A stretch of 64,000 nt of DNA from assembly GCA_950097015.1 (NCBI GenBank), contig CATNEN010000032.1, positions 1,178,001-1,242,000 on the forward strand. The letters are read 5' to 3'. The DNA comes from Macrostomum hystrix. Taxonomy: Eukaryota; Animalia; Platyhelminthes. The translations under genes were made by a program, and so were the position numbers. Below the pieces are notes generated by a model that was given only the letters and a program-made list of their open reading frames with translations, was not told where the DNA came from and made no database searches. Positions 25,052 to 44,457 of the stretch are shown here, one piece after another (the first letter of the stretch is position 1; each line of letters opens with the position of its first letter).

Positions 25052-28000
25052 CTAGGACACAACTCGGGTCTCGCTGACGACTTTCTTGACCTCTTCTGGC
25101 GTCGCCTCCTTGTTGCTGAAGCTGCAGCGGATCTCGCGACCGTGTCGTCCCATCACCGGCCTGAAGTTGTCCACCATTGGCCGCTTCTTGGTCTTGTCAA
25201 AGAAGGTCTTTGTGAACTTCAGCAGCTGAAAGATGCAGTGAATGGTTCGCGTGTGTACCGGGTCAGTGTGTCTCGGGCTGTAAGAACTCCAAAACAAATA
25301 TTCACGCAGTGTCAGTCAGTTACCAGGTCTTTGCGGATCTTCATGGCCTCGGTGAAGATGTGCCACTGCGCCACCGGGTTGCAGCCGGGGGTGGTGAAGG
25401 CGCCGTCGTAGTTCACGAAGCGGTGCAGGCTCTCAGGCAGCAGATCGCGGAGCTGCAGCTCGACTGTCTCCACGTCTATTGGGTGCAATGGGAAACTGAT
25501 GTGCACCCGCTGTGGAATGGATTGCTAGCCTATGCGTGGCTGGTAGATGTGATGGAATGGATTGCTAGCCTATGCGTGGCTGGTAGATGTGATGGAATGG
25601 ATTGCTAGCCTATGCGTGGCTGGTAGATGTGATGGAATGGATTGCTAGCCTATGCGTGGCTGGTAGATGTGATGGAATGGATTGCTAGCCTATGCGTGGC
25701 TGGTAGATGTGATGGAATGGATTGCTAGCCTATGCGTGGCTGGTTGATTGGATGAATGGATTGCTAGTCGATTCAAACAATTGCTCACTCTTTGCCGAGA
25801 CCACAGCAGCGCCGTGGGACACCGGGACGTACAGCTCAGTCAAGTTCGACAGGACCTGGGCGATCACGTGACCAGCCCAGCCGTCGTGATCCTTGGGCTG
25901 GAAAATGAATTGGTGATGTGAAAATACGAGCGATTTTTTATGGAAAACCAGCCGGCAGTGAGCAGTGAGGAGGAGGCGGTGAGCAGTGAGGAGGCCAGCA
26001 GGCAGTGAGCAGAGAGGAGGCCAGCAGGCAGTGAGCAGTGAGGAGGAGGCGGTGAGCAGTGAGGAGGCCAGCAGGCAGTGAGCAGAGAGGAGGCCAGCAG
26101 GCAGTGAGCAGAGAGGAGGCCAGCAGGCAGTGAGCAGTGAGGAGGCCAGCAGGCAGTGAGCGGTGAGGAGGCCAGCAGGCAGTGAGCAGTGAGGAGGCCA
26201 GCAGGCAGTGAGCAGTGAGGAGGCCAGCAGGCAGTGAGCAGTGAGGAGGCCAGCAGGCAGTGAGCAGTGAGGAGGCCAGCAGGCAGTGAGCGGTGAGGAG
26301 GCCAGCAGGCAGTGAGCAGAGAGGAGGCCAGCAGGCAGTGAACGCGGCAGTCGTAGAGCTCAGGCGCCGCAGTGCCGCACCTGCATGGGGTGGATGAAGC
26401 CAGCCAGCACGGTGATGGCGTCGGTGGTGTCGATGGCCTTGGTCATGCTGAGCCCCAGCCGCTTGCACACAATGTGCACCTCCATTGGGGTGGGCAGTGG
26501 CTTGCCGGTGGCGTCGAACAGGCGGTGCTCGCTGCCGACGCCCTTCTCTACGTTGGCGGCGCTGCCCCAGTGGAAGTGGAACTGGAAGCAGTTGTAGGTG
26601 CCGTTCAGGTGGCCTCCGGTCACCGTCAGGTCGGCGCTGTTCACGGCGTCGGCTTGGACTGCGGGCGCGGCGGGGTTTGGTGGAAGTTTTTGACCGTTCT
26701 GATGCGTGACTTAAGATCCGTTACTTTTGATCCGTTACTTCTGGTCAGTTACTTCTGATCCGTTACTTCTGGTCCCTCTTTCTGATCCGTTATTTTTTTC
26801 CGTTACTTCGGCCCCGTTACTTCTTATAGGTTGTAACTGATCCGCTTATTATGCTTTCGTTTCTTTAGAATGGTCACAAATTTATTCTGTTCATTATTTC
26901 GTAGTTCTTTTAACCGAACTTACGTTACTTTTGGGTGTGATTGGCCGAGCGTTTAACGCGTCTTCCTCTCATGCCAAGGTCCCTGAGCTCGCGGATAGAA
27001 GGCTTGGGGGCTTGTCGTGCAGTTTACGCCCTTAAGGCCTTAATGTGAAAGTGTACACTGTCCGACGATGAGAAGGTCAGGGCAGATATGTACACACCTG
27101 TGTGAGTGAGTGCCTTTTACTTCTTGTTCGTCACTTTAGCAGCTTAATATGAGCTTGGCATTTTCAAAGTTTTCAAAGCTTCAAAAGCAGCTTACTCGAG
27201 TGTCCGTTATTCTTGACAATGAACTTTCTTTCGTCGTGCCAGCCCTTGCCTAGCTGGATCTTCTTCAGCTTCGCCGATTTGGCCTTGCAAACCTTCAGCT
27301 CGATGTTGATCGGCGAGGGCCTGTTGGCTGGCAGGTCCCTGCAGTAGGGGCTGATCTGCCACCATTTTTGCGGAGCTGGGAGGCAATTTTGATGGAATCG
27401 GTTGTTAAGAGGAAATCGCTAATTAGGTGACGAGGCATTGTGATAGCTTCTAAAAGGCATAGTTACTCGCTCACCGAATTCGCAGTGCGGTCCGTGCGCA
27501 TTCTCGTAGTCGTGATTGTAAACGAAGGACTTGGTGTCGCATGGAATGACTAAACAGATGGGTTTGTAATTGAAGGTAAGAATAATTAAAGTTATTCTAA
27601 TTCGCCATGCATTCCTTCGAATTCTTATCCATCGAATTCCAATCCATCGAATTCCAATCCATCGAATTCCAACCCATCGAATTCCAACCCATCGAATTCC
27701 AATCCATCGAATTCCAATCCATCGAATTCCAATCCATCGAATTCCAACCCATCGAATTCCAACCCATCGAATTCCAACCCATCGAATTCCAATCCATCGA
27801 ATTCCAACCCATCGAATTCCAACCCATCGAATTCCAATCCATCGAATTCCAACCCATCGAATTCTAATCCATCGAATTTCAATCCCTCGAATTTCAATCC
27901 CTCGAATTTCAATCCCTCGAATTCCAATCCATCGAATTCCAATATCTCCTCAAACGATACTCACTGGCGCAGTCAATTTTCCAAGAGGAGTCCAGGTCGT

Positions 28001-30621
28001 ACAGATGGGTCTCTGCCCAGCGCTCCAGCTTCAACCGGAACTCGCTGTGCCTGATGTAGTGTCGCGGATGCTTCGCCAACTGCAATCGGACGAAGCCGTT
28101 CTGCATCATCACTGCCTTGAAGCTCGAGGCGCTCTTGAACTCCTGGCTACCATCAGACTTAGACATCATGACGAAGTGGTCGGCAACGGTGTTGAGGTAG
28201 TAACCTGGCTTCTCCGCTGACTCGATGGACACAGCCCGGGGGTTGCCATTCAGGGCAGGCGTCACGAACTTGAACCTGGTGCCATTGCTGGTGCTGATGG
28301 TGGCCACCACGTCTGGGCCGGCCTTCACGGAGTACTTCGGATAGTTCAGCGATCGCAGATGGAACTCGCCGTCACAGACGTCCAGATGAAAGACTTTGTC
28401 TTATTGGTTCGTTGGGATATCAGGTAGTGGGACTTTAGGATTTGGTTATTTGAAACTGGCATGTCAGAACTCGGGATATTTAAAATTGTGATTTTTTAAA
28501 TTGGGATATTTGAAATTGGGATATTTGAAATTGGGATATTTGAAGTTGGGATATTTCAAATGGGATATTTGAAATTGGGATATTTGAAGTTGGGACATTC
28601 GAAATTGGGATATTTGAAATTGGGATATTTGATATTGGGATATTTGAAAATGGGATATTTGAAATTGGGATATTTGAAATTGGGATATATGAAATCGGGA
28701 TATTTGAAATTGGGATATTTGAAATTGGGATATTTGAAATGTTAATGCCGAATACTGGCTTATCAGCAAACGGGAATGCGGAAAACGGTGCATATTAATT
28801 CACCCACCGCTCGTGCAGATGAAGCTGAACATGGTATCCTCCTTGTACAGATTGGTGTCTGTCCATCTGATCAACTTCAGCTGAAATGACTGATGCCTCA
28901 GGTAGTGCCTAGTGTGAGTAGTACTCTTGAACCTGAAGTAGCCCTCAATGGCCTTCTCCAGAATGAAGGAGGCCTCCCTCTTAAACAGCTCGCTATTGTC
29001 GTTCTTCAACAGTTTCACAGTGTAATCCACGTTGCACAGAAAATATCCAGGAAATGACAGCGATTCAAGCGAGATGCCGCCAGCTGTGCCGTCCAGAGCG
29101 GCGCGCTCAACAAATCTGGTGCCATTGCCAATGGCGATGCCCATCACGCCGCTGCCCTTCTGGGTCAGGTAGTAGGTTGGGTAGTTGTACGAGTTGAAGA
29201 TCACCGCATTGGGACACATTCCTGGAATAGAAAATTTGGATTTTGTGAGAATTCATGTCTAATCCCAGTTGCAATCTGCTGCACACACTGCAATCTGCTG
29301 CACACACTGCAATCTGCAGCACACACTGCAATCTGCAGCACACACTGCAATCTGCAGCACACTCTGCAATCAGCTGCACACACTGCAATCTGCAGCACAC
29401 ACTGCAATCTGCAGCACACACTGCAATCTGCAGCACACTCTGCAATCAGCTGCACACACTGCAATCTGCAGCACACTCTGCAATCTGCTGCACACACTGC
29501 AATCTGCAGCACACACTGCAATCTGCAGCACACACTGCAATCTGCAGCACACTCTGCAATCAGCAGCACACACTGCAATCTGCAGCGCACACTGCAATCA
29601 GCAGCACACACTGCAATCTGCTGCACACACTGCAATCTGCTGCACACACTGCAATATGCAGCACACTCTGCAATCTGCTGCACACACTGCAATATGCAGC
29701 ACACACTGCAATCTGCAGCACACACTGCAATCTGCAGCACACTCTGCAATCAGCTGCACACACTGCAATCTGCAGCACACACTGCAATCTGCAGCACACA
29801 CTGCAATCTGCAGCACACTCTGCAATCAGCTGCACACACTGCAATCTGCAGCACACTCTGCAATCTGCTGCACACACTGCAATATGCAGCACACACTGCA
29901 ATCTGCAGCACACACTGCAATCTGCAGCACACTCTGCAATCAGCTGCACACACTGCAATCTGCAGCACACACTGCAATCTGCAGCACACACTGCAATCTG
30001 CAGCACACTCTGCAATCAGCTGCACACACTGCAATCTGCAGCACACTCTGCAATCTGCTGCACACACTGCAATCTGCAGCACACACTGCAATCTGCAGCA
30101 CACACTGCAATCTGCAGCACACTCTGCAATCAGCAGCACACACTGCAATCTGCAGCGCACACTGCAATCAGCAGCACACACTGCAATCTGCTGCACACAC
30201 TGCAATCTGCTGCACACACTGCAATCTGCTGCACACACTGCAATATGCAGCACACTCTGCAATCTGCTGCACACACTGCAATATGCAGCACACACTGCAA
30301 TCTGCTGCACACACTGCAATCTGCAGCACACACTGCAATCTGCTGCACACACTGCAATCTGCTGCACACACTGCAATCAGCAGCACACACTGCAATATGC
30401 AGCACACACTGCAATCTGCTGCACACACTGCAATCTGCTGCACACACTGCAATATGCTGCACACACTGCAATATTCAGCACACAGCACTGGCAGTAGCCA
30501 GTTTTGCACTTAATAAATTGCGCAGATGATTCATCATTAAAATCAAGACTTGCTTACTTTCAGACAGGGCAACTTGCGCGCCAGTCACCAGAATTAGCGC
30601 TGCCAGGATAGCAACTTGCAT
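25052..30621 (-). CDS. Secreted alpha-carbonic anhydrase A with two N-terminal AbfB/CBM42-like domains; 9 exons (30621-30558, 29221-28808, 28399-27965, 27549-27475, 27375-27196, 26658-26381, 25897-25789, 25475-25324, 25225-25052), 626 aa
   Basis: Signal peptide MQVAILAALILVTGAQVALSE, AbfB-like repeats (SLESLSFPGYFL...REASF, RHYLRHQ...KEDTMF), and CA motifs RPSPINI, NNGHS, QFHFHWG, GSEH, MEVHIV, YDGAFTTPGC, DNFRPV. All introns GT-AG and in phase; exon lengths identical to gene C. Confidence 0.88.
25515..25770. repeat. 40-bp minisatellite in CA-A intron 7 (inverted counterpart at about 42350-42650)
   Basis: ATTGCTAGCCTATGCGTGGCTGGTAGATGTGATGGAATGG tandem units. Confidence 0.9.
25950..26340. 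repeat. 26-bp minisatellite in CA-A intron 6 (inverted counterpart at about 41780-42170)
   Basis: GCAGTGAGCAGTGAGGAGGCCAGCAG units; the ORFs 25938-26468 (-) and 41651-42181 (+) translate identically. Confidence 0.9.
26933..27114 (+). mobile_element. tRNA-derived SINE-like element, copy 3 (internally shortened) in CA-A intron 5
   Basis: TGGCCGAGCGTTTAACGCG (A-box-like)...CCAAGGTCCCTGAGCTCG...AAGGCTTGGGGGCTTGTCGTG...GTCAGGGCAGAT...CACCTGTGTGAGTGAGTGCC. Confidence 0.7.
27615..27945. repeat. 15-bp minisatellite (CATCGAATTCCAATC) in CA-A intron 3
   Basis: Tandem array. Confidence 0.93.
28470..28742. repeat. 15-bp minisatellite (GGGATATTTGAAATT) in CA-A intron 2
   Basis: Tandem array. Confidence 0.93.
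29272..30482. repeat. 19-bp minisatellite (CACACACTGCAATCTGCAG) in CA-A intron 1
   Basis: Tandem array of about 63 copies; explains the many Cys/His-rich ORFs at 29100-30530. Confidence 0.95.
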
Positions 30622-31389: not shown

Positions 31390-33800
31390 AATTCTATTCC
31401 TTCATTCAGTGTGCATAGATTAGCAATCCATTCTAATTCTTCATTCAGTGGGCATAGATTAGCAATCCATTCTAATCCTTCATTCAGTGGGCATAGATTA
31501 GCAATCCATTCTATTCCTTCATTCAGTGGACATAGATTAGCAATCCATTCTATTCCTTCATTCAGTGGGCATATATTAGCAATCCATTCTATTCCTTCAT
31601 TCAGTGGGCATAGATTAGCAATCCATTCTATTCCTTCATTCAGTGGGCATAGATTAGTAATCCATTCTATTCCTTCATTCAGTGGGCATAGATTAGCAAT
31701 CCATTCTATTCCTTCATTCAGTGGGCATAGATTAGCAATCCATTCTATTCCTTCATTCAGTGGGCATAGATTAGCAATCCATTCTATTCCTTCATTCAGT
31801 GGGCATAGATTAGCAATCCATTCTATTCCTTCATTGATCAGTGGGCATAGATTAGCAATCCATTCTAATCCTTCATTCAGTGGGCATAGATTAGCAATCC
31901 ATTCTATTCCTTCATTCAGTGGGCATAGATTAGCAATCCATTCTATTCCTTCATTGATCAGTGGGCATAGATTAGCAATCCATTCTAATCCTTCATTCAG
32001 TGGGCATAGATTAGCAATCCATTCTATTCCTTCATTCAGTGGGCATAGATTAGCAATCCATTCTATTCCTTCATTCAGTGGGCATAGATTAGCAATCCAT
32101 TCTATTCCTTCATTCAGTGGGCATAGATTAGCAATCCATTCTATTCCTTCATTCAGTGTGCATAGATTAGCAATCCATTCTATTCCTTCATTCAGTGTGC
32201 ATAGATTAGCAATCCATTCTATTCCTTCATTCAGTGTGCATAGATTAGCAATCCATTCTATTCCTTCATTCAGTGTGCATAGATTAGCAATCCATTCTAT
32301 TCCTTCATTCAGTGTGCATAGATTAGCAATCCATTCTATTCCTTCATTCAGTGTGCATAGATTAGCAATCCATTCTATTCCTTCATTCAGTGTGCATAGA
32401 TTAGCAATCCATTCTATTCCTTCATTCAGTGGGCATAGATTAGCAATCCATTCTATTCCTTCATTCAGTGAGCATAGATTAGCAATCCATTCTATTCCTT
32501 CATTGATCAGTGGGCATAGATTAGCAATCCATTCTATTCCTTCATTGATCAGTGGGCATAGATTAGCTATCCATTCTATTCCTTCATTCAGTGGGCATAG
32601 ATTAGCTATCCATTCTAATCCTTCATTCAGTGGGCATAGATTAGCAATCCATTCTATTCCTTCATTCAGTGGGCATAGATTAGCAATCCATTCTATTCCT
32701 TCATTCAGTGGGCATAGATTAGCAATCCATTCTATTCCTTCATTCAGTGGGCATAGATTAGCAATCCATTCTAATCCTTCATTCAGTGGGCATAGATTAG
32801 CAATCCATTCTATTCCTTCATTCAGTGGGCATAGATTAGCAATCCATTCTATTCCTTCATTCAGTGGGCATAGATTAGCAATCCATTCTATTCCTTCATT
32901 CAGTGGGCATAGATTAGCAATCCATTCTAATCCTTCATTCAGTGGGCATAGATTAGCAATCCATTCTATTCCTTCATTCAGTGGGCATAGATTAGCAATC
33001 CATTCTATTCCTTCATTCAGTGGGCATAGATTAGCAATCCATTCTATTCCTTCATTCAGTGGGCATAGATTAGCAATCCATTCTATTCCTTCATTCAGTG
33101 GGCATAGATTAGTAATCCATTCTATTCCTTCATTCAGTGGGCATAGATTAGCAATCCATTCTATTCCTTCATTCAGTGGGCATAGATTAGCAATCCATTC
33201 TATTCCTTCATTCAGTGGGCATAGATTAGCAATCCATTCTATTCCTTCATTGATCAGTGGGCATAGATTAGCTATCCATTCTATTCCTTCATTGATCAGT
33301 GGGCATAGATTAGCAATCCATTCTATTCCTTCATTCAGTGTGCATAGATTAGCAATCCATTCTATTCCTTCATTGATCAGTGGGCATAGATTAGCAATCC
33401 ATTCTATTCCTTCATTGATCAGTGGGCATAGATTAGCAATCCATTCTTTTCCTTCATTCAGTGGGCATAAATTAGCAATCCATTCTATTCCTTCATTGAT
33501 CAGTGGGCATAGATTAGCAATCCATTCTATTCCTTCATTCAGTGGGCATAGATTAGCAATCCATTCTATTCCTTCATTCAGTGGGCATAGATTAGTAATC
33601 CATTCTATTCCTTCATTGATCAGTGGGCATAGATTAGCAATCCATTCTATTCCTTCATTCAGTGGGCATAGATTAGCAATCCATTCTATTCCTTCATTCA
33701 GTGGGCATAGATTAGCAATCCATTCTATTTCTTCATTCAGTGGGCATAGATTAGCAATCCATTCTATTCCTTCATTCAGTGGGCATAGATTAGCAATCCA
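31390..33800. repeat. 39-bp minisatellite (CATTCAGTGGGCATAGATTAGCAATCCATTCTATTCCTT) with 42-bp variants, about 61 copies
   Basis: Tandem array between the CA-A start and the CA-B end. Confidence 0.97.
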
Positions 33801-34073
33801 TCATTGAAATCGTGAAATCGTAGCTCAGAACCTCTTAGCAATGTTCAATTTTGCGTTCAGTTCGCGTTCGGAAGGCAAAAAAAGCCAAGCTTACTAAACA
33901 ACAAGTTTAAAATAAAAGGAAAAGAGTTTCTAGGTATATTTCACCGCCACCGGCTTCGAACAAGCTCCGAGTTCAAAGTCTCAAATAGCTAAATCTTAAT
34001 CTTCAAGGCTCTACTAGAAGCTGAGCAGAGAGCAGCAATGATCTCAGTTAGTCTCAGGAGGGCCAGCGGCTTC

Positions 34074-37000
34074 CTATTCAGCCGGCTCTTCGATTGGCTC
34101 ATCGAACTCGCCAGCCGAGTCCATCAGTGAAGCCGAGTTGCCGAAGCTGCAGCGAATCTCGCGACCGTGCAGGCCCGTCACCGGCCTGAAGTTGTCCACC
34201 ATCGGCCGCTTCTTGGCCTCATCAAAAAATACCGACGTGAACTTCAGCATCTGCGGGGCGAGAGGGATGAGGACCTTGGAATCTGCCTGACTGTCTCACC
34301 TGTGTATCACACCCTCTGACTGTCTCACCTGTGTAGTACACCCACTGTCTATCTCACCTGTGTATCACACCCTCTGACTGTCTCACCTGTGTAGTACACC
34401 CACTGTCTATCTCACCTGTGTATCACACCCTCTGACTGTCTCACCTGTATAGTACACCCACTGACTATCTCACCTGTGTCTCACCTGTGTTTGTCAACCC
34501 CTTGTCTCACAACCCTTGCCTGTCTCTCGCCTCTCACCCCTCAGTCCTCAGCCTTAGCGCAAGCGCAGCAAGTATTTCTCACCAGCCGTTTGTCCACCCT
34601 AACGGGTTCGGTGAAAAGGTGCCACTGGACCACCGGGTTGCAGCCGGGTGTGGTTAGCGCGCCGTCGTAATTCACAAAACGATCGACCTTCTCCGGCAGT
34701 AGGTCGCGGAGCAGCAACTCAACAGGCGCGCCTAACATAGCAAAAGCAGGTGCTCATAAGTAAGGCCTTCTCAATCCAAAAAAATATTGACCGTGATCAT
34801 TGCTGCTTACGATCATCTGCGGTTGGCTCGCTTCCGTGAGGCACCGGTGCGTACAGGTGGCTCATGTCCGACAGAGCCTGGCCCAGTAGTCTACTAGTCA
34901 CAGTTTCCGGCTCCATATCCTGCAGTGGTAGTAGGGTCGGATTTAGTGAATTTTAGTGAAATTAGTGAATTTAGTGATTTAGTGCACAGTCATTAAGGCT
35001 CTTATGCCAGGCGAGGGGTTGTGTGTGCAGCGGAGGTGTGCAGTAATTAGGAATCTTATATCAAGTAAGGTGTTGAGCGTGTATAGTTACCCTCTGCGGC
35101 ACAATGAACGCGCCCAGCACAGCAATGGCATCCGGGGTGATCACGGCCTGTTGGAAGCTCATGTCCAGCCGCTTGCACACAATGTGCACCTCCATGGGGG
35201 TCGGCACCAGATTGCCGGCGGCGTCAAAAAGGCGGTGCTCACTGCCGATGCCCTTATCCATGTTGGCCGAGCTGCCCCAGTGCAGGTGGAACTGGACACA
35301 GTTGAATGTGGTCTTCAGGTGGCCTCCAGTGACTCTCAAGCCTTCGCTGTTCAAAGCGTCCGCCTGGACTGCAGTTTGGGAGAATAGGAGCTTGGCCTGT
35401 TCTAGTGCTTTAGACTGGTCTGTTCTAATCTAACAATAGACCCATGAGATCAATTAACCCATAACAACAATGGATCCGTGAGAACAATGGATCGGTGAGA
35501 ACAATGGATCCGTGAGAACAATGGATCCGTGAGAACAATGGATCCGTGAGAACAATGGACCCGTGAGAACAATAGATCTGTGAGAACAATGGATCCGTGA
35601 GAACAATGGACCCGTGAGAACAATGGATCCGTGAGAACAATAGATCCGTGAGAACAATGGACCCGTGAGAACAATGGACCCGTGAGAACAATGGATACGT
35701 GAGAACAATGGATCCGTGAGAACAATGGACCCGTGAGAACAATGGATCCGTGAGAACAATAGATCCGTGAGAACAATAGATCCGTGAGAATAATCAACCC
35801 GTGAGAACAATGGATCCGTGAGAACAATGGATCCGTGAGAATAATCAACCCATGAGAACAATGGACCCGTGAGAACAATGGATCCGTGAGAACAATAGAT
35901 CCGTGAGAACAATGGACCCGTGAGAACAATGGATCCGTGAGAACAATGGATCCGTGAGAACAATGGATCCGTGAGAACAATGGACCCGTGAGAACAATGG
36001 ATCCGTGAGAACAATGGACCCGTGAGAACAATGGACCCGTGAGAACAATGGATCCGTGAGAACAATGGATCCGTGAGAACAATGGATCTGTGAGAACAAT
36101 AGATCCGTGAGAACAATAGATCTGTGAGAACAATGGATCCGTGAGAACAATGGACCCGTGAGAACAATGGATCCGTGAGAACAATAGATCCGTGAGAACA
36201 ATGGACCCGTGAGAACAATGGACCCGTGAGAACAATGGATCCGTGAGAACAATGGATCCGTGAGAACAATGGACCCGTGAGAACAATGGATCCGTGAGAA
36301 CAATAGATCCGTTAGAACAATAGATCCGTGAGAATAATCAACCCGTGAGAACAATGGATCCGTGAGAACAATGGATCCGTGAGAATAATCAACCCGTGAG
36401 AACAATGGACCCGTGAGAACAATGGATCCGTGAGAACAATAGATCCGTGAGAACAATGGACCCGTGAGAACAATGGATCCGTGAGAACAATGGATCCGTG
36501 AGAACAATGGATCCGTGAGAACAATGGACCCGTGAGAACAATGGATCCGTGAGAACAATGGACCCGTGAGAACAATGGACCCGTGAGAACAATGGATCCG
36601 TGAGAACAATAGATCCGTGAGAACAATAGATCCGTGAGAACAATGGACCCGTGAGAACAATGGACCCGTGAGAACAATGGATCCGTGAGAACAATAGATC
36701 CGTGAGAACAATGGACCCGTGAGAACAATGGATCCGTGAGAACAATGGATCCGTGAGAACAATGGACCCGTGAGAACAATGGATCCGTGAGAACAATAGA
36801 TCCGTGAGAACAATGGACCCGTGAGAACAATGGACCCGTGAGAACAATGGATCCGTGAGAACAATAGATCCGTGAGAACAATAGATCCGTGAGAACAATG
36901 GACCCGTGAGAACAATGGACCCGTGAGAACAATGGATCCGTGAGAACAATAGATCCGTGAGAACAATAGATCCGTGAGAATAATCAACCCGTGAGAACAA

Positions 37001-37648
37001 TTTCCCAGTTCCCACTGGTAAATGGTCAAGACAGCATTTGTAATAAAAAGCAGCCCTTACTTGAATGCCCATTGTTCTTCACAAAGAACTTTGTCCTGCC
37101 CAGCCAGCTGGCGCTGAACTGCAGCGGCCGGAGTGCGGGCGACTTGGACTGACAGGCGCTGAGGCCAATGTTGATTGGCGATGGTCGGTTGGCCCTCGAA
37201 TCGGCGCACTTTGCATTGATTTGTGCCCAATTGGCTGGTGCTGCATAGTCAGGAAGTCTTTGAAAAATCACAACTTGGCTTATTTAGTTTGGAATCTAGA
37301 GCAATTTTCAACTCACCAAACTCGCAATGTCCACCGTGCTGGTTCTCGTAGGCTCGCTGGTACACAAACGACTTTGAGGTACAGCTTCGCACGCCTGGGT
37401 TCCATAAAATAGTAAAAACTAGGCGAAAATTAAATGTTCTCCAAGGTGAGGTTGGGGTGCCAACAATGAAACATCACTTACAACACTTAGTAAACTCAAG
37501 CGTACAAACTCTGCGCTCAAAATACCTTTGTACACAAGTACGTGCATGTTCATAATTAGAACACATCAATTTGATTGGATCTTTCCAACTTACTTCTGGC
37601 CATCGAGGCTCCAGAACAGGACAGGATGAGCAGTAACCAGAGTAGCAT
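34074..37648 (-). CDS. Secreted alpha-carbonic anhydrase B without AbfB domains; 7 exons (37648-37594, 37394-37317, 37240-37061, 35368-35091, 34919-34811, 34731-34583, 34250-34074), 341 aa
   Basis: Signal peptide MLLWLLLILSCSGASMAR, then SCTSKSFVY...HCEF, RPSPINI, NNGHS, QFHLHWG, GSEH, MEVHIV, YDGALTTPGC, DNFRPV. Exon sizes 180/278/109 match genes A and C. Confidence 0.88.
34288..34480. repeat. About 29-bp alternating minisatellite (CTGTCTCACCTGTGTATCACACCCTCTGA-like) in the last CA-B intron
   Basis: Tandem units. Confidence 0.85.
35460..37000. repeat. 17-bp minisatellite (CCGTGAGAACAATGGAT) in CA-B intron 3, about 90 copies
   Basis: Tandem array; explains the SHGSIVLTDPLF-type ORFs. Confidence 0.97.
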
Positions 37649-38862
37649 TGTGCTTCAGATTCCTCTATATATTGCCACCGTGAGCGGATTGCTGGTGTCT
37701 GCGTGGGCACTGTTTCCACTTTTATTTAGCCCCGCGAAAAAAACCGGTTCTATCTGAGAACCATTTTAGATCGCCCACCTCTACCTGACCCACCCGCCAA
37801 CTCACAGGGTGCACTTATAAGCAACCTTTCCGTGAGCAACCAATGGCATACAAAAGTTTCATGCTCACACAAGAGCACACATTATCAGCCAATGGGTTGG
37901 CGTAAATCGATTTAAAAAAACGAAACATGCTTGTTGCCGAGGATCTGGAGAAGCCAGTCCCTCTGCTGCGTCACTGTCAGTCTAGAGCTAAGCGCAGATA
38001 ATGGGGAAGGACCTGACAGGCAGGCAAGCATCGGGACCAACTCCCACAGACTGCCACGGGATCAAACAGATATGAGCACCTCAAAAACCGGTTCAAACTG
38101 GTAATTGCCAGCCCAATTGCCCGTAGGCATTATGCTAAGTAATATCAATACAGAAAATAAAGATACGCTGGTCGTTTTAATAGGCAGTTTTAATATTATC
38201 TAAAAACGCCCACTTACTTTTTTGAATGCAATAGTTTGCCTTTGCACATGTAATCCGGCACTTTCCATTTTAAGCTTTAGCTTGGCCAATCAGCTGCAAT
38301 ATGAGTTATATCTCTATTATACTGTTTCGTTTTCTTTCAAACAGAAAAGTTTAACTCATGCACGCGCATCACAGAAAGGCATTCTTAGCCTTGGGTGCGT
38401 CAGCAACCTGAAGTGCTGCTCAGAGCTGCCCGGGGCAGTGAAGGGTTAGGATAATATCCGTGGGATTTAGTAACTGAGCACAAATTAGTGAGCACGATCT
38501 GTCAGCTCTTGACAGTTTTGTGACAGCCATTGGTTCTCCGAAGTCGTTGAGGGCCCGATCCTCCCCGTACCCGCTCCACCGAGCGCAGCTGGCATTCGAA
38601 GCGGTGTAGCAGCGGTGCCAACATACGGCAAGCGACTGCGGATCTTCAGCTATAGGCTCCCAGTGGCTAGTTCTATGGCGTGCGAGCAGGCGGGATTCGA
38701 GAGGAAGAGGTCCCGTCCGGAGAGGTCCGGCTTCACCGGCAGGAGGCGGTTTAGAATTTAAGGCGCATTGAAACGGATTTCATAAATTCACAACAGATCG
38801 CCCAGAGCTGCTGAGAGCGGAGCCACTATTGTTTCACAGACCCGACTGTTTGATCACTGGAA

Positions 38863-41800
38863 ATGCGTCAGGTCCTGCTGCTGACGGCCCTCCTAATGGC
38901 CTGCATTCAGGCCTCAGTGGCTGCCAGTGAGTCGCCTTTCAATTAATTCTGACCACAGAAGATTTGTATTTATTCGCCATCCTATTTATCAACTCCCAAC
39001 TCATTCCAGGAATGTGTCCCAATGCGGTGATCTTCAACTCTTATAACTACCCAACTTACTACCTGACCCAGAAGGGAAACGGGCAGATTGGCATCGCCCT
39101 TGGCAATGGCACCAGGTTTGTTGAGCGCGACGCTCTGGACGGCACAAAGGACGGCGTGTCGCTCGAGGCCCTATCCCAGCCCGGATATTTCTTGTGCAAC
39201 GTGGACAACCTTGTCAAACTGTTGAAAAACGACAATAGCGAGCTGTTCAAGAGGGAGGCCTCCTTCACTCTGGAGAAGGCCGACGAGGGCTTCTTCAGGT
39301 TCAAGAGTACTACTCACACTAGGCACTACCTGAGGCATCAGTCGCTGCAGTTAAAGCTCATGAGCTGGGTGGACACGAACCTGTTCAAGGGGGACTCGGC
39401 TTTCGGCGTTGTGTGCACCAGCGGTGAGTGCCGAGCAAAATTTTGCGGCGCATAAGCAGAGAGCGCTTTGGTAAGAGCTTAGCACAATGCCCCACACACC
39501 CAAACTCAGACAAGCTGTTCAAGTTGGACGTCTGCGACGGCGAGTTCCAGCTGAAGTCCCTGAACTACCCGAAGTACTCGGTCAAGGCCGACGTCAATGT
39601 CATCTCCGCCATCAGCACCAGCAATGGAACCAGGCTGAAGTTCGTGACGCCCGCTCTGAATGGCAACCCCCGAGCTGTGTCCATCGAGTCAGCTGAGAAA
39701 CCCGGACACTTCCTCAACACCGTGGCAGACCACTTCGTCATGATGTCCAAGCTGGACAACACTCAGGAGTTCAAGAACGCCTCAACCTTCAAGGTGGTCA
39801 TCATGAGCAACGGCTACGTGCGTCTGCAGTCTCTGCAGAATCCGCGTCACTACATCAGGCACAGCGAGTTCCGGCTGAAGCTGGAGCGCTGGGCAGAGAC
39901 CCATCTGTACGACCTGGACTCCTCTTGGAAAATTGACTGCGCCAGTGAGTATGAGCCTATAGCTCATGAGAGTATGGGGCTTAGATCTATTTGCATTCCG
40001 AAATAAGTGATCGAAACTATGTAGTGCAGAACCTTGAATGAAGCTTATGCAGTTGTCGCAACTGGACAAACACCGAAACGCTTAGAACAAGACCAACTAT
40101 TGACATACACTCACAGATTGCAAAAAACCGTTCAAAAACAAAGAAAACTTTCATGTCTAACTTGCTAGATCAGGCGAAAAATTGTTTAACATTTTTTTAC
40201 TTTGACGAGTGAATGTGCATGTTTTCAGTGGCCGTAAAAACTTTTTTATTTTATCAACGTAATTGCAGTCATTCCATGCGACACCAAGGCCTTCGTGTAC
40301 AACCATGACTACGAGAATGCACACGGACCGCACTGCGAATTCGGTAAGACCACTCCGCTTAAAGGCTGTCACAACAAGAGTGGCATCTGCAGGGCTGTCA
40401 CAACAAGAGTGGCATCTGCAGGGCTGTCACAACAAGAGTGGCATCTGCAGGGCTGTCACAACAAGAGTGGCATCTGCAGGGCTGTCACAACAAGAGCGGT
40501 ATCTGCAGGGCTGTCACAACAAGAGTGGTATCTGCAGGGCTGTCACAACAAGAGTGGTATCTGCAGGGCTGTCACAACAAGAGTGGCATCTGCAGGGCTG
40601 TCACAACAAGAGTGGCATCTGCAGGGCTGTCACAACAAGAGTGGCATCTGCAGGGCTGTCACAACAAGAGTGGCATCTGCAGGGCTGTCACAACAAGAGC
40701 GGTATCTGCAGGGCTGTCACAACAAGAGTGGTATCTGCAGGGCTGTCACAACAAGAGTGGTATCTGCAGGGCTGTCACAACAAGAGTGGTATCTGCAGGG
40801 CTGTCACAACAAGAGTGGTATCTGCAGGGCTGTCACAACAAGAGTGGTATCTGCAGGGCTGTCACAACAAGAGTGGTATCTGCAGGGCTGTCACAACAAG
40901 AGTGGTATCTGCAGGGCTGTCACAACAAGAGTGGTATCTGCAGGGCTGTCACAACAAGAGTGGTATCTACAGGGCTGTCACAACAAGAGTGGTATCTGCA
41001 GGGCTGTCACAACAAGAGTGGTATCTGCAGGGCTGTAGTTAATTGCTAAATTAATTGCTTTCATCATAAATAAAACTCAAACTAGAAGACTGACTTGTTT
41101 CAACACTCCAGCATTGTTCACAATCTCCAACTCATCCCACAGCCCCCGCCAAGTGGTGGCAGCTCAGCCCGTTCTGTAAGGACCTGCCAGCCAACAGGCC
41201 GTCCCCGATCAACATCGAGCTGGGCCTGTGCAAGGCCAAGTCGCCGAAGCTGAAGAAGATCCAGCTAGGCAAGGGCTGGCACGACGAGAGAAAGTTCATC
41301 ATCAAGAACAACGGACACTCGAGTGAGCAGTCGTTGTATTCTATTGAAATGTTGCTCTAATTCTGTCTGACTATAGTAGATTCGTGAGAAGAAGTAACGG
41401 ATCTTAAGTAACGCAATCAGAACGGTCAAAAACTTCCACCAAACCCCGCCGCGCCCGCAGTCCAAGCCGACGCCGTGAACAGCGCCGACCTGACGGTGAC
41501 CGGAGGCCACCTGAACGGCACCTACAACTGCTTCCAGTTCCACTTCCACTGGGGCAGCGCCGCCAACGTAGAGAAGGGCGTCGGCAGCGAGCACCGCCTG
41601 TTCGACGCCACCGGCAAGCCACTGCCCACCCCAATGGAGGTGCACATTGTGTGCAAGCGGCTGGGGCTCAGCATGACCAAGGCCATCGACACCACCGACG
41701 CCATCACCGTGCTGGCTGGCTTCATCCACCCCATGCAGGTGCGGCACTGCGGCGCCTGAGCTCTACGACTGCCGCGTTCACTGCCTGCTGGCCTCCTCTC

Positions 41801-43110
41801 TGCTCACTGCCTGCTGGCCTCCTCACCGCTCACTGCCTGCTGGCCTCCTCACTGCTCACTGCCTGCTGGCCTCCTCACTGCTCACTGCCTGCTGGCCTCC
41901 TCACTGCTCACTGCCTGCTGGCCTCCTCACTGCTCACTGCCTGCTGGCCTCCTCACCGCTCACTGCCTGCTGGCCTCCTCACTGCTCACTGCCTGCTGGC
42001 CTCCTCTCTGCTCACTGCCTGCTGGCCTCCTCTCTGCTCACTGCCTGCTGGCCTCCTCACTGCTCACCGCCTCCTCCTCACTGCTCACTGCCTGCTGGCC
42101 TCCTCTCTGCTCACTGCCTGCTGGCCTCCTCACTGCTCACCGCCTCCTCCTCACTGCTCACTGCCGGCTGGTTTTCCATAAAAAATCGCTCGTATTTTCA
42201 CATCACCAATTCATTTTCCAGCCCAAGGATCACGACGGCTGGGCTGGTCACGTGATCGCCCAGGTCCTGTCGAACTTGACTGAGCTGTACGTCCCGGTGT
42301 CCCACGGCGCTGCTGTGGTCTCGGCAAAGAGTGAGCAATTGTTTGAATCGACTAGCAATCCATTCATCACATCAACCTGCCACGCATAGGCTAGCAATCC
42401 ATTCATCACATCAACCAGCCACGCATAGGCTAGCAATCCATTCCATTACATCTACCAGCCACGCATAGGCTAGCAATCCATTCCATCACATCTACCAGCC
42501 ACGCATAGGCTAGCAATCCATTCCATTACATCTACCAGCCACGCATAGGCTAGCAATCCATTCCATCACATCTACCAGCCACGTACAGGCTAGCAATCCA
42601 TTCCATCAATCACATCAACAAGCCACGCATAGGCTAGCAATCCATTCCACAGCGGGTGCACATCAGTTTCCCATTGCACCCAATAGACGTGGAGACAGTT
42701 GAGCTGCAGCTCCGCGATCTGCTGCCTGAGAGCCTGCACCGCTTCGTGAACTACGACGGCGCCTTCACCACCCCCGGCTGCAACCCGGTGGCGCAGTGGC
42801 ACATCTTCACCGAGGCCATGAAGATCCGCAAAGACCTGGTAACTGACTGACACTGCGTGAATTTTTGTTTTGGAGTTCTTACAGCCCGAGACACACTGAC
42901 CCGGTACACACGCGAACCATTCACTGCATCTTTCAGCTGCTGAAGTTCACAAAGACCTTCTTTGACAAGACCAAGAAGCGGCCAATGGTGGACAACTTCC
43001 GGCCGGTGATGGGACGACACGGTCGCGAGATCCGCTGCAGCTTCAGCAACAAGGAGGCGACGCCAGAAGAGGTCAAGAAAGTCGTCAGCGAGACCCGAGT
43101 TGTGTCTTAA
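38863..43110 (+). CDS. Secreted alpha-carbonic anhydrase C with two N-terminal AbfB/CBM42-like domains; 9 exons (38863-38926, 39010-39423, 39510-39944, 40269-40343, 41143-41322, 41461-41738, 42222-42330, 42687-42838, 42937-43110), 626 aa
   Basis: Signal peptide MRQVLLLTALLMACIQASVAA; same exon lengths (64/414/435/75/180/278/109/152/174) and phases as gene A; the three Zn-ligand His are intact. Confidence 0.9.
40363..41036. repeat. 29-bp minisatellite (GGGCTGTCACAACAAGAGTGGCATCTGCA) in CA-C intron 4
   Basis: Tandem array, about 23 copies. Confidence 0.95.
41390..43110 (+). repeat. Right arm of the ~1.7 kb inverted duplication
   Basis: Matches 25052-26730 in reverse complement. Confidence 0.92.
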
Positions 43111-44457
43111 TCTCGAGTCGGACTTCTCGATCAATGGAAGTTTGTGGCAGATCTGACAGTGAACTGCGTGACATTTGATTCTTTGGTTTTGGGGTTCTTT
43201 AAATTATTTCCTCCGACTGAAAGAGACAAAAATGTGGACACACCGGCCTTCAAAACCTATTTTAATTGCGCTTACGAGTATTATATTAAAAGTTGGAGCC
43301 TAGTTAGTTCAAAAGTTAGTAGCAAAAGTTAGTTCCGGGAATAAAATCGTCTAGCAATGTTATGTGAGAAGTTAGTAAATAGGTTAGAAAAATCCAACAT
43401 ATTTTGAGCCCCTTCAAATTTTTGGACTAAACATTCTGATCTGTGGTTTGACAATGTGATGACATAATATAAATTTACAGTTGTAATCCGAATTCTCGCA
43501 CAATTTGAGCACAAACTTTTTTTTCTTCGACAAACTCTTGCTATCTTACATACTCGTATTGTTCCGATTGATGTAAAACTAAGCCGAAATATATTACTGG
43601 TGCTGGTGCAATGAGCAAAGACTGATAAGCGCAAACTAAAATCTTTGTTTTTCGACTTTTAATAATTTTATACATTTCACGTGACATACGAGCTATATTG
43701 TAAACAAAATACTTTTACTATACTAAAGTGCACACAAAAGTTTTTTATTTTCCACGTTTTTTTTCACCTTTTCGCTCCTTCTCAATCGGCTGGCTTTTCG
43801 TCATAAGTCAAGTTGGACAACTTACCGTTCCAACCCGTAAGATCCGCGCTTCTGCTTCGTGTGCCTTTAGAGTAGACGTTCCGAAACATATTACGGCGCT
43901 GAAGGGTTCAGGAACACGATACACGACGTCGAGAGGCATCTGCACCGTCACGAGGTATATTGTGGCTTAAGCCGATACTGCTGTGGACATGTGCTTCTGC
44001 AGGCAAGGAGTCAGTGTGGAATCACACCCTTCTGGTTCTATACAGTTTGCAAATAACGCCTGACTTATGTATTCTGATGAACTCTACTACCCGTAGTTCA
44101 TGACGGGTGACGCAATACTTCTTTTCGGCAGAAATTAGCCCTTTTCAGTCCTTCACACCTATATAAATGAGGTTGAGACAGCCATTAGTGCGCATGCTGA
44201 TGTACGATAGGTCATTGCATGGACAGTATTTGCTGTAAATTACACGTCTTTCAGAAATCTTAGACCGAAAAGCCAGTAAGTAAAACCGGAAATCCTTGGT
44301 GCACACTTTAATCCTTGGTGCGAGGACAATTTGAAGTCAAATATCTAGAAAAAAACTAGTATTTTTAAAGCGTTATTTTAAGGCTTGTATTGGTGCATCA
44401 AATTTGGGACTTAAGCTTCGTGAAGATTAATAAATAAATGAGTTCAGGTCGTGATGC

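What the first reader, a model, noticed from the sequence alone, without database searches (positions are those of the whole stretch)
38863..43110. Secreted AbfB(CBM42)-AbfB-alpha-carbonic anhydrase fusion protein, present twice
Seen: genes C (+) and A (-, 25052-30621) both splice in frame as signal peptide, two ~140-aa beta-trefoil-like repeats (S[LI]ES..PG[YH]FL...[AS][ST]F and RHY[LI]RH...D..[FW]), and an alpha-CA domain with QFHFHWG, GSEH, MEVH and TTPGC. Established: AbfB/CBM42 binds arabinofuranose in fungal and bacterial arabinofuranosidases and occurs in animal otogelin-type matrix proteins; alpha-CA uses His94/96/119 for Zn. I do not know of a described AbfB-CA fusion. Inference: a CA tethered to glycans (mucus, adhesive, egg coat, matrix, or food/symbiont walls) that controls local pH or carbonate chemistry.
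Basis: partly seen in the sequence, partly recalled or inferred. Interest (0 to 1): 0.9.

Follow-up and report, generated by a model that had tools for sequence, protein, structure and literature searches.

The report
Flatworm carbonic anhydrase with lectin domains
A Macrostomum flatworm carries two copies of a real, expressed gene for a secreted carbonic anhydrase joined to two sugar-binding-type (CBM42/AbfB) modules. This domain combination was found only in this genus, and no paper found here describes it.

Summary
Gene C (38863-43110, +) is a nine-exon gene encoding 626 aa: signal peptide, two AbfB/CBM42 beta-trefoils (one exon each), and a complete alpha-carbonic anhydrase. All eight GT..AG junctions appear in intron-skipping contigs of four public runs. 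One contig runs from the first AbfB exon into the CA exons. The one correction is that exon 8 starts at 42687, not at the nearer AG.

The host is a Macrostomum flatworm. The M. lignano orthologue Mlig012818 is 86% identical and is auto-named "carbonic anhydrase" in UniProt. Three of its peptides, covering AbfB2, the linker and the CA start, are in the published adhesive-footprint proteomics of M. lignano.

Searches from both the AbfB side and the CA side found the fusion only in Macrostomum (three lineages).

Every CA catalytic residue and the extracellular-type disulfide are present. The AbfB2 exon models as CBM42 (pLDDT 95, TM about 0.85). Only the gamma sugar pocket keeps its His/Asp pair.

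Gene A (-, 25052-30621) is an intact paralogue, but its first exon has no RNA support.

Most likely this is a soluble active CA tethered to a secreted glycan matrix. The ligand and tissue are unknown. I class it as a new variant of a known kind, of moderate interest. Other first-reader notes of this scan cover this same stretch (s1-268109, s1-268203); none on other DNA came up.

The parts
38863..38926 (+). Gene C exon 1: start codon and signal peptide (21 codons plus 1 nt, ends in phase 1)
   Evidence: Junction 38926/39010 in RNA contigs. It is the only strongly hydrophobic stretch of the protein. Modelled as a helix in the orthologue. Cleavage was not tested.
39010..39423 (+). Gene C exon 2: AbfB/CBM42 domain 1, a symmetric phase 1-1 exon of 414 nt
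   Evidence: Pfam AbfB 2.7e-18. PDB 3kmv 9.1e-10. The homologous region of P0157 models at pLDDT 93-98.
39510..39944 (+). Gene C exon 3: AbfB/CBM42 domain 2, a symmetric phase 1-1 exon of 435 nt
   Evidence: Pfam AbfB 1e-16. PDB 3kmv 3e-11. Model pLDDT 95.3 and pTM 0.89. The top 19 fold matches are all CBM42-bearing structures, TM 0.78-0.87.
40269..40343 (+). Gene C exon 4: Cys-rich linker and N-terminal extension of the CA domain (75 nt, phase 1-1)
   Evidence: Junctions 39944/40269 and 40343/41143 in four runs. The M. lignano peptides IDCALIPCETK and AFVYNPAYENAR map to the homologous residues.
41143..41322 (+). Gene C exon 5: CA N-terminal part with Cys23 equivalent (aa 341), the SPINI motif, Asn62 and the proton-shuttle His64 (aa 388)
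   Evidence: Alignment of the orthologue to human CA II. Positions.
41461..41738 (+). Gene C exon 6: CA core with Gln92, zinc ligands His94 and His96 (aa 417, 419), Glu106, Glu117 and His119 (aa 451)
   Evidence: Pfam Carb_anhydrase 1.1e-12. Alignments. Positions.
42222..42330 (+). Gene C exon 7: CA surface segment, longer than in CA II
   Evidence: Junctions 41738/42222 and 42330/42687 in four runs.
42687..42838 (+). Gene C exon 8: CA part with Thr199, Thr200, Cys203 and Trp209. The acceptor is corrected from 42653 to 42687.
   Evidence: Starting the exon at 42653 breaks the frame. RNA contigs of four runs use 42687. Pfam Carb_anhydrase 1.6e-10.
42937..43110 (+). Gene C exon 9: CA C-terminus and a short hydrophilic tail, with the stop codon at 43108-43110. 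No transmembrane or GPI-type hydrophobic end.
   Evidence: Junction 42838/42937. Hydropathy scan.
25052..30621 (-). Gene A, a paralogue with the same nine exons: 30621-30558, 29221-28808, 28399-27965, 27549-27475, 27375-27196, 26658-26381, 25897-25789, 25475-25324, 25225-25052. It encodes 626 aa, 88% identical to gene C.
   Evidence: Exon mapping and open ORF. A-specific RNA contigs show the 28399/28808 and 27375/27475 joints. Exon 1 has no RNA coverage.
41392..43109 (.). Tract nearly identical, in inverted orientation, to 26726-25053 of gene A. It runs from mid intron 5 to the stop codon and includes intronic minisatellites. This points to recent gene conversion of the catalytic half.
   Evidence: blastn: 96.6% over 1719 nt with 13 mismatches. 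dS is 0.018 in exons 6-9 against 0.43-0.58 in exons 2-5.
34137..37648 (-). Gene B, a CA-only paralogue. Its signal-peptide exon (37648-37594, phase 1) is followed directly by the homologue of exon 4 (about 37394-37317). There are no AbfB exons.
   Evidence: tblastn of gene C against this region and reading the sequence. Not checked with RNA, and the full model was not assembled.

Best explanation
Gene C, and its paralogue gene A, encodes a soluble secreted protein of about 68 kDa. A catalytically competent, extracellular-type alpha-carbonic anhydrase is preceded by two CBM42/AbfB beta-trefoil modules.

Shown here:
- The gene is spliced as one transcript.
- The orthologous M. lignano protein is made.
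- Both halves evolve under purifying selection.
- The CA has the full catalytic set.
- The AbfB modules have the CBM42 fold.

Inferred mechanism:
- After signal-peptide cleavage and secretion, the single surviving (gamma) sugar pocket of each AbfB module binds a terminal sugar on a secreted or surface glycoconjugate.
- This gives a bivalent tether that holds the enzyme in a glycan matrix.
- That matrix is most probably material the worm leaves on the substrate (surface mucus or adhesive footprint).
- There the CA domain keeps CO2, bicarbonate and protons at equilibrium on a sub-second time scale, which uncatalysed hydration cannot do.

The ligand sugar, the secreting cell type and the physiological purpose (secretion swelling or curing, boundary-layer CO2 or acid handling) are not established.
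For: Gene structure: all eight junctions appear in four runs, and one 1436-nt contig spans exons 2 to 7. The CDS is open and encodes 626 aa.

Conservation:
- The M. lignano orthologue Mlig012818 is 86% identical over its full length.
- A third lineage (P0001, an intron-less 2370-nt transcript contig) is 71% identical and has the same Pfam pair.
- dN/dS is 0.19-0.26 for the AbfB domains and 0.14-0.21 for the CA.

Protein evidence: three tryptic peptides in sheet footprints_Trypsin_intact_1 of Dataset S2 of PMC6410801 match Mlig012818 exactly at residues 165, 301 and 312. These are in AbfB2, across the position of the exon 3/4 join, and at the CA start.

CA competence:
- Gln92, His94, His96, Glu106, Glu117, His119, Thr199, Thr200, His64 and Cys23/Cys203 are all present.
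- The best sequence matches are disulfide-engineered CA II.
- The best fold matches are the extracellular CAs XII, XIV, IX and IV.

AbfB modules:
- Pfam, PDB and fold evidence agree.
- The gamma-pocket His and Asp are kept in all six Macrostomum domains. The same columns are His in 70/74 and Asp in 63/74 other AbfB domains.
- These are arabinose-contacting residues in the AtAbf43C CBM42 structure (PMC12493170).

Secretion: the only hydrophobic segment is N-terminal, there is no transmembrane or GPI signal, and there are five N-glycosylation sequons.

Context: the nearest AbfB relatives are AbfB-only proteins of a tunicate and of hydrozoans. One of them, Hydra XP_002159690.1, is a basal-disc-specific protein found in Hydra's secreted glue (PMC5080974). 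It matches the window's AbfB2 at 1.1e-16.
Against: - No binding, activity or localisation data exist for this protein.
- The alpha and beta pockets are degenerate in all six Macrostomum domains. The gamma-pocket aromatic residue is Phe, Leu or Met rather than Tyr, and the Asn120 position is Ser or Glu. Sugar binding may be weak, altered or lost.
- Animals are not known to make arabinofuranose (my own knowledge), so an endogenous ligand would have to be a different sugar.
- The footprint sample also contains ribosomal proteins, peroxiredoxin, calmodulin and a vitellogenin-like protein. Three peptides there do not show specific secretion.
- The protein was not found in the stored parts of the PNA pull-down or tail datasets. 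Those files were cut when stored.
- The signal peptide was judged by inspection and hydropathy only.
Confidence: 0.6

Rival explanations
1. The protein is the same secreted active CA, but the AbfB modules recognise non-self glycans. Candidates are furanosides such as arabinofuranose or galactofuranose on diatom food, bacteria or fungi. The enzyme would then work in the gut lumen or as a pattern-recognising surface factor, in digestion-linked pH control or innate defence.
For: Characterised CBM42 modules bind arabinofuranose side chains of plant and microbial polysaccharides (PMC12493170; PDB titles). Animals are not known to make these sugars (my own knowledge). The closest known analogue, CA VI-pentraxin, carries 'innate immunity' among its paper's keywords (PMC5723433). 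The M. lignano footprint sample would also contain any gut or surface secretion.
Against: Two of the three pockets are lost, and the gamma pocket departs from the arabinose-contacting set at the Tyr and Asn positions. The nearest relatives are animal AbfB-only proteins, one of which is a glue component rather than a digestive enzyme. No expression data place it in the gut.
Confidence: 0.2
2. The AbfB modules no longer bind sugar. They serve as a structural spacer, an oligomerisation module or a protein-binding module for a secreted CA. The fusion would matter for assembly or stability rather than for glycan tethering.
For: The alpha and beta pockets are degenerate in all six domains, and the gamma aromatic residue is Leu or Met in domain 1 of two species. 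In the CA VI-pentraxin fusion the added domain is thought to mediate pentamer formation (PMC5723433).
Against: The gamma His and Asp are invariant in all six Macrostomum domains across three lineages at dS of about 0.8-1.0. That would be unexpected for a purely structural role. Phe at the aromatic position is common in the wider family (27/74).
Confidence: 0.15
3. The fusion is an artefact: two neighbouring genes (an AbfB lectin gene and a CA gene) wrongly joined by the reader or by the assemblers.
For: Logan contigs are assemblies, and one of them is probably chimeric between paralogues A and C.
Against: - The exon 3/4 and 4/5 joints are seen in four runs from two studies, and one contig spans exons 2-7.
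- The same architecture is in an independent transcript contig of another lineage and in M. lignano gene models.
- An M. lignano tryptic peptide covers the AbfB2-to-CA boundary.
- Phases and exon lengths are identical in both paralogues.
Confidence: 0.02

Closest known systems
Non-mammalian CA VI-pentraxin fusion (zebrafish CA VI-PTX, PMC5723433)
   Same: Both are secreted, catalytically active alpha-CAs joined to a ligand-binding module that does not otherwise belong to CAs. That paper proposes the pentraxin arrived by replacement of one exon. Here each AbfB module is one symmetric phase 1-1 exon.
   Different: The added module there is C-terminal and a pentraxin that is thought to drive pentamer formation. 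Here there are two N-terminal CBM42-type beta-trefoils. The families, lineages and events are unrelated. CA VI-PTX has measured activity and localisation; this protein has neither.
CBM42 (AbfB) modules of GH43 and GH54 alpha-L-arabinofuranosidases (PDB 3kmv, 9nxg/h/i, 3akf, 1wd3)
   Same: Same Pfam family and same beta-trefoil fold (TM 0.78-0.87). The gamma-pocket His and Asp that contact arabinofuranose are conserved.
   Different: Those modules are attached to glycoside hydrolases of bacteria and fungi and usually keep two working pockets. Here the partner is a carbonic anhydrase in an animal, only one pocket is plausibly intact, and the Tyr and Asn contacts are replaced.
AbfB-only secreted proteins of Hydra basal disc glue (XP_002159690.1 and XP_002167824.2; PMC5080974)
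   Same: They are among the nearest sequence relatives of the window's AbfB domains (1.1e-16). They are animal tandem-AbfB proteins found in material left on the substrate.
   Different: They have no enzyme domain. Other AbfB domains in the alignment mostly keep the beta as well as the gamma pocket. Hydra and Macrostomum are distant, and orthology is not shown.
Extracellular alpha-CAs IV, VI, IX, XII and XIV
   Same: They share the Cys23-Cys203 disulfide positions, signal-peptide entry into the secretory pathway, and the complete catalytic set. They are the best structural matches.
   Different: Most of them are held at the cell surface by a GPI anchor or a transmembrane helix (CA VI is secreted). 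This protein has neither and carries lectin-type modules instead.
Matrix-associated CAs of biomineralisers (for example molluscan nacrein-type or 'CA14-like shell formation' proteins)
   Same: They are secreted CAs embedded in an extracellular organic matrix. Gastropod 'carbonic anhydrase 14-like' proteins are the best non-Macrostomum CA hits.
   Different: Identity is only 28-32%. None of those CA hits carries PF05270 in the precomputed annotation. As far as I know, Macrostomum makes no carbonate skeleton.

Membership tests
alpha-carbonic anhydrase (Pfam PF00194, EC 4.2.1.1) | Profile match above the curated threshold over the whole domain | tested here: met
   Exons 6 and 8 score 48.6 and 41.4 bits against a cut-off of 27. 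The orthologue P0157 scores 158 bits over profile positions 4-254 of 254.
alpha-carbonic anhydrase (Pfam PF00194, EC 4.2.1.1) | Zinc ligands His94, His96 and His119 | tested here: met
   Present in genes C and A at aa 417, 419 and 451, by alignment to human CA II.
alpha-carbonic anhydrase (Pfam PF00194, EC 4.2.1.1) | Catalytic network: Thr199-Glu106 gatekeeper, Gln92 and Glu117 second shell, His64 proton shuttle | tested here: met
   All are present: aa 546, 433, 415, 449 and 388.
alpha-carbonic anhydrase (Pfam PF00194, EC 4.2.1.1) | CA fold | tested here: met
   The CA core of the P0157 model (pLDDT about 70-93 for residues 400-600) matches CA XII, XIV, IX and IV at Foldseek E of about 1e-12. 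The N-terminal 90 residues of the domain were modelled poorly.
alpha-carbonic anhydrase (Pfam PF00194, EC 4.2.1.1) | CO2 hydration activity, sulfonamide-sensitive | not testable with these tools
   Needs recombinant protein and a stopped-flow assay.
AbfB / CBM42 (Pfam PF05270) | Profile match above the curated threshold | tested here: met
   66.8 and 61.7 bits against a cut-off of 22.8. PDB CBM42 3kmv at 9.1e-10 and 3e-11.
AbfB / CBM42 (Pfam PF05270) | Beta-trefoil fold closest to solved CBM42 structures | tested here: met
   The AbfB2 model has pLDDT 95.3 and pTM 0.89. Ranks 1-19 are all CBM42-bearing structures, with rmsd 1.5-2.0 A for the bacterial ones.
AbfB / CBM42 (Pfam PF05270) | Sugar-pocket residues (His, Tyr, Asp, and Asn in gamma) as in arabinose-bound AtAbf43C CBM42 | tested here: inconclusive
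   Gamma pocket: His and Asp are kept in all six Macrostomum domains, Tyr is replaced by Phe, Leu or Met, and Asn by Ser or Glu. Beta pocket: His is lost in all six. Alpha pocket: degenerate (reference residues from PMC12493170).
AbfB / CBM42 (Pfam PF05270) | Binding of arabinofuranose-containing glycans | not testable with these tools
   Needs glycan arrays or ITC with the recombinant AbfB pair.
Secreted soluble protein | Cleavable N-terminal signal peptide and no membrane anchor | tested here: inconclusive
   The only hydrophobic 19-residue window is at residues 2-6 onward, and there is no C-terminal hydrophobic tail. No signal-peptide predictor was available. Orthologue peptides occur in a footprint sample that also holds intracellular proteins.

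The most novel reading that the evidence does not exclude
The AbfB-CA protein is a working component of the flatworm's secreted surface or adhesive material. It would be held on the glycosylated secretion by its two one-pocket lectin modules. It would supply the fast CO2/bicarbonate/proton equilibration needed for the secretion to swell, set or release within the sub-second attach-detach cycle. That would be an enzymatic pH/carbonate step not yet part of any model of temporary bioadhesion.
Probability: 0.15. Interest if true: 0.75.

Novelty: new variant of a known kind. Interest (0 to 1): 0.55.

Why it matters
Secreted carbonic anhydrases are usually free, or held by a GPI anchor or a membrane helix. 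A CA carrying its own carbohydrate-binding modules would be another way to place bicarbonate and pH chemistry inside an extracellular glycan matrix. It also shows the CBM42 module, known from microbial arabinofuranosidases, attached to an unrelated enzyme in an animal.

The locus displays the building blocks side by side:
- a CA-only paralogue (gene B);
- two fusion paralogues (genes A and C);
- one symmetric exon per added domain.

It is therefore a clean example for studying exon shuffling and partial gene conversion.

M. lignano is a transgenic and RNAi-tractable model for temporary adhesion, and the orthologue already appears in its footprint proteomics. The functional question can be tested directly. 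The finding remains a lineage-restricted domain combination with no functional data, so its wider importance is uncertain.

Tried and rejected
- **Exon 8 boundary.** Exon 8 starting at 42653 (the nearest AG) gives a frameshift and stops. I considered a GC donor at 42324 as a repair. RNA contigs showed instead the canonical 42330/42687 intron.
- **Whether the window is M. lignano.** Rejected: genes C and A are only 86% and 81% identical to Mlig012818. The species within Macrostomum was not determined because run labels are coded.
- **The fusion outside Macrostomum.**
  - Only P0001 and P0008 among the top 150 AbfB hits of 1.84 billion representatives carry a CA.
  - None of 115 CA homologues of about 340-1100 aa other than Macrostomum carries PF05270.
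  - An AbfB-region search gave none.
  - The 100 nearest ESM Atlas clusters are all CA-only.
- **Expression and localisation data.** There are no hits for Mlig012818 or RNA815_2810 in full texts. Nothing was found in the stored supplements of Arbore 2015 or Grudniewska 2016. Arbore's full positional table was cut when stored, so this is uninformative.
- **Full-length model.** The first alignment left AbfB2 and the CA N-terminus almost without homologues. This explains the low pLDDT there. AbfB2 was remodelled alone with a domain alignment.
- **Coccolith-matrix paper.** PMC11685980, the literature hit for 'AbfB' plus 'carbonic anhydrase', mentions the two terms separately and is irrelevant.


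Full report
**1. What is there**

The region has eukaryotic gene structure. The ORF listing and Pfam on the open stretches gave two AbfB (PF05270) hits: 38964-39455 at 2.7e-18 and 39428-40006 at 1e-16. They also gave two Carb_anhydrase (PF00194) hits: 41475-41759 at 1.1e-12 and 42656-42850 at 1.6e-10.

Reading the splice sites gave nine exons. My first model used the nearest AG before the last-but-one CA block (42653). It frameshifted.

**2. Transcript evidence**

Nine public runs hold about half of the sampled words of 38800-40350, as expected for spliced RNA. I laid the Logan contigs of four runs (two studies) on 38800-43200. All eight introns are skipped at GT..AG:
- 38926/39010
- 39423/39510
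- 39944/40269
- 40343/41143
- 41322/41461
- 41738/42222
- 42330/42687
- 42838/42937

Depth is zero in the introns. X3 record 9 (1436 nt) runs from exon 2 through exon 7, and X2 record 5 covers exons 1-3. The AbfB and CA exons therefore belong to one transcript.

With exon 8 starting at 42687 the CDS is 1881 nt and 626 aa. Exons 2 and 3 each encode one AbfB domain, and both are symmetric phase 1-1 exons. Introns 4, 6 and 7 are filled with minisatellites.

**3. The second copy and the neighbourhood**

Gene A on the minus strand (30621-25052) has the same nine exon lengths and phases. It has canonical splice sites and an open 626-aa frame, 88% identical to gene C.

A-specific contigs show the exon 2/3 and exon 4/5 joints. 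Two parts of gene A lack independent support:
- Its predicted first exon has no coverage in any of the four runs.
- Its exon 3/4 joint is seen only in a contig that carries gene C sequence.

One X6 contig joins gene A exon 2 to a gene-C-type exon 1. The first 31 nt of exon 2 are identical in A and C, so this is probably an assembly chimera, but it is unresolved.

From mid intron 5 to the stop codon the two genes are nearly identical, introns included (41392-43109 against 26726-25053, 13 mismatches). dS is 0.018 there, against 0.43-0.58 in exons 2-5. This indicates recent gene conversion of the catalytic half.

Between A and C lies gene B. It is a CA-only paralogue whose phase-1 signal-peptide exon (37648-37594) is followed directly by the homologue of exon 4.

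**4. Whose genome, and how widespread**

An exhaustive HMMER search with the AbfB2 exon against 1.84 billion representatives gave 337 hits at E up to 0.001. Among the best 150, only P0001 (632 aa) and the fragment P0008 also contain a CA domain.
- P0001 is 71% identical to gene C over its full length. It comes from an intron-less 2370-nt transcript contig of run SRR30276812.
- Word-indexed searches found the M. lignano cluster: PAA72792, PAA66219 and PAA56185 (Mlig012818.g1-3, 625 aa), plus UniProt A0A267E3P9, A0A1I8HD97 and others. Precomputed annotation gives them PF00194 plus PF05270, and UniProt auto-names them 'carbonic anhydrase'.

Gene C is 86% identical to these and gene A is 81%. The window is therefore from another Macrostomum lineage.

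No protein outside Macrostomum combined the two families in any of these searches:
- a CA-region search of proteins of about 340-1100 aa (115 hits);
- an AbfB-region search;
- the ESM Atlas.

The CA search did return the known CA VI-pentraxin fusions of reptiles (PF00354). The nearest AbfB relatives are tandem AbfB-only proteins of the tunicate Clavelina and of Hydra, Hydractinia and Clytia.

**5. Protein-level evidence**

The supplement of Wunderer et al. 2019 (PMC6410801) includes Dataset S2, sheet footprints_Trypsin_intact_1. It lists transcript RNA815_2810.1, annotated only as carbonic anhydrase, with three peptides. All three match Mlig012818 exactly:
- residue 165, at the start of AbfB2;
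- residue 301, across the position homologous to the exon 3/4 join;
- residue 312, at the start of the CA domain.

The fusion protein is therefore made in M. lignano and occurs in material collected as adhesive footprints. That sample also contains ribosomal and other intracellular proteins, so this is weak evidence for specific secretion.

**6. Is the CA competent?**

Alignment of the orthologue to human CA II (E about 1e-24) and mapping onto genes C and A show every key residue:
- Asn62 and the proton shuttle His64;
- Gln92, zinc ligands His94 and His96;
- Glu106, His107, Glu117, zinc ligand His119;
- Val121, Val143, Thr199, Thr200, Trp209.

Both cysteines of the Cys23-Cys203 disulfide typical of extracellular CAs are also present. 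The best PDB sequence hits are the disulfide-engineered CA II variants. The best fold matches of the model's CA core are CA XII, XIV, IX and IV.

The protein has no transmembrane or GPI-type hydrophobic segment. It has five N-glycosylation sequons, and the mature form is about 68 kDa with pI about 8.9.

**7. Are the repeats AbfB, and can they bind sugar?**

Both exons hit solved CBM42 modules by sequence: 3kmv at 3e-11 and 9.1e-10, plus 9fnk, 9nxi and 3akf. The AbfB2 exon was modelled with an 80-domain alignment and gave pLDDT 95.3 and pTM 0.89. Foldseek ranks 1-19 are all CBM42-bearing structures, with 3kmv at TM 0.81-0.87 and rmsd 1.5-1.8 A.

In arabinose-bound AtAbf43C CBM42 the sugar contacts are His70/Tyr73/Asp89 in the beta pocket. 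In the gamma pocket they are His118/Asn120/Tyr121/Asp136 (PMC12493170).

| Pocket position | 74 other AbfB domains | Six Macrostomum domains |
|---|---|---|
| Gamma His | 70/74 | His in all six |
| Gamma aromatic | Tyr 36, Phe 27 | Phe (four), Leu or Met (two) |
| Gamma Asp | 63/74 | Asp in all six |
| Gamma Asn120 position | Asn 27, Gly 22 | Ser or Glu |
| Beta His | 62/74 | Thr or Asn |
| Beta Asp | 65/74 | Ala or Glu in five of six |

These counts come from alignment A2. The alpha pocket is degenerate. Each module thus has at most one plausible pocket, which makes the protein bivalent. The specificity is unknown.

Both AbfB domains are under purifying selection. dN/dS is 0.19-0.24 between the paralogues and 0.26 against the third lineage.

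**8. Interpretation**

The molecular reading is a secreted, soluble, active alpha-CA carrying two CBM42-type modules. This is well supported.

Three further statements are inference:
- the modules tether the enzyme to a glycan matrix;
- that matrix is the worm's surface or adhesive secretion;
- the purpose is fast CO2/bicarbonate/proton equilibration there.

Support for these is circumstantial. The orthologue appears in footprint proteomics. A close AbfB relative, Hydra XP_002159690.1, matches at 1.1e-16 and is a basal-disc-specific protein found in Hydra's secreted glue (PMC5080974 Table 2).

Two rivals keep the same molecular picture:
- a non-self glycan target (food or microbes);
- AbfB modules that have become structural.

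The artefact reading is essentially excluded.

**9. Comparison and novelty**

The closest functional analogue is the CA VI-pentraxin fusion of non-mammalian vertebrates (PMC5723433). It is a secreted active CA with an exon-borne ligand-binding module of unrelated family and position.

I found no paper describing an AbfB-CA protein. The architecture exists only as automatic annotation of M. lignano entries.

I class it as a new variant of a known kind: a secreted alpha-CA with a new type of targeting module. It is restricted to one flatworm genus. Interest is moderate, and the question can be tested directly in an established model.

Noticed in passing
window 41392-43109 and 26726-25053: The 3' halves of genes C and A (mid intron 5 to the stop codon, intronic minisatellites included) are nearly identical in inverted orientation (13 mismatches). 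The 5' halves differ by about 15% at the nucleotide level. dS is 0.018 against about 0.5. This looks like recent gene conversion limited to the catalytic half.
   Followed up: yes
window 34137-37648 (- strand): There is a third, CA-only paralogue (gene B) between A and C. Its phase-1 signal-peptide exon joins straight to the homologue of exon 4, exactly where A and C carry the two phase 1-1 AbfB exons. Whether this reflects gain or loss of the AbfB exons is undetermined. The model was not fully assembled or checked with RNA.
   Followed up: partly
window 30558-30621 and 29221: The predicted first exon of gene A has no coverage in four runs, although exon 2 is covered. One X6 contig continues from gene A exon 2 into a sequence identical to gene C exon 1. 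The first 31 nt of exon 2 are identical in both genes, so this may be an assembler chimera, or gene A may use another 5' exon.
   Followed up: partly
window 25513-25767, 25948-26341, 27613-27943, 28447-28740, 29270-30484, 31391-33801, 35466-37001, 40364-41036, 41778-42171, 42352-42649: Almost every intron of the three CA genes, and the spacer between A and B, is filled by long minisatellite arrays. Units are 14-40 nt, with up to 90 copies and arrays up to 2.4 kb. They create long spurious ORFs in all frames.
   Followed up: no
M. lignano proteins P0151, P0161, P0160 and P0008 (UniProt A0A1I8HD97, A0A1I8HDX5, A0A1I8HFW3, A0A1I8FLP6): The UniProt/WormBase-type models of the orthologue differ from the NCBI 625-aa model. 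Two carry a 29-residue N-terminal extension, one lacks an internal segment, and the 368-aa P0008 reads like a frame-shifted, exon-skipping model of the same gene. These look like annotation artefacts rather than isoforms.
   Followed up: partly
window 38871, 39185, 41177, 41282, 41288, 42736, 42745: Single-base differences between runs, for example 39185 A>C in X2 and X3. Depending on the site they could be allelic or strain variation, or cross-mapping of the paralogue. 41282 and 41288 may be gene A sequence in contigs laid on gene C.
   Followed up: no
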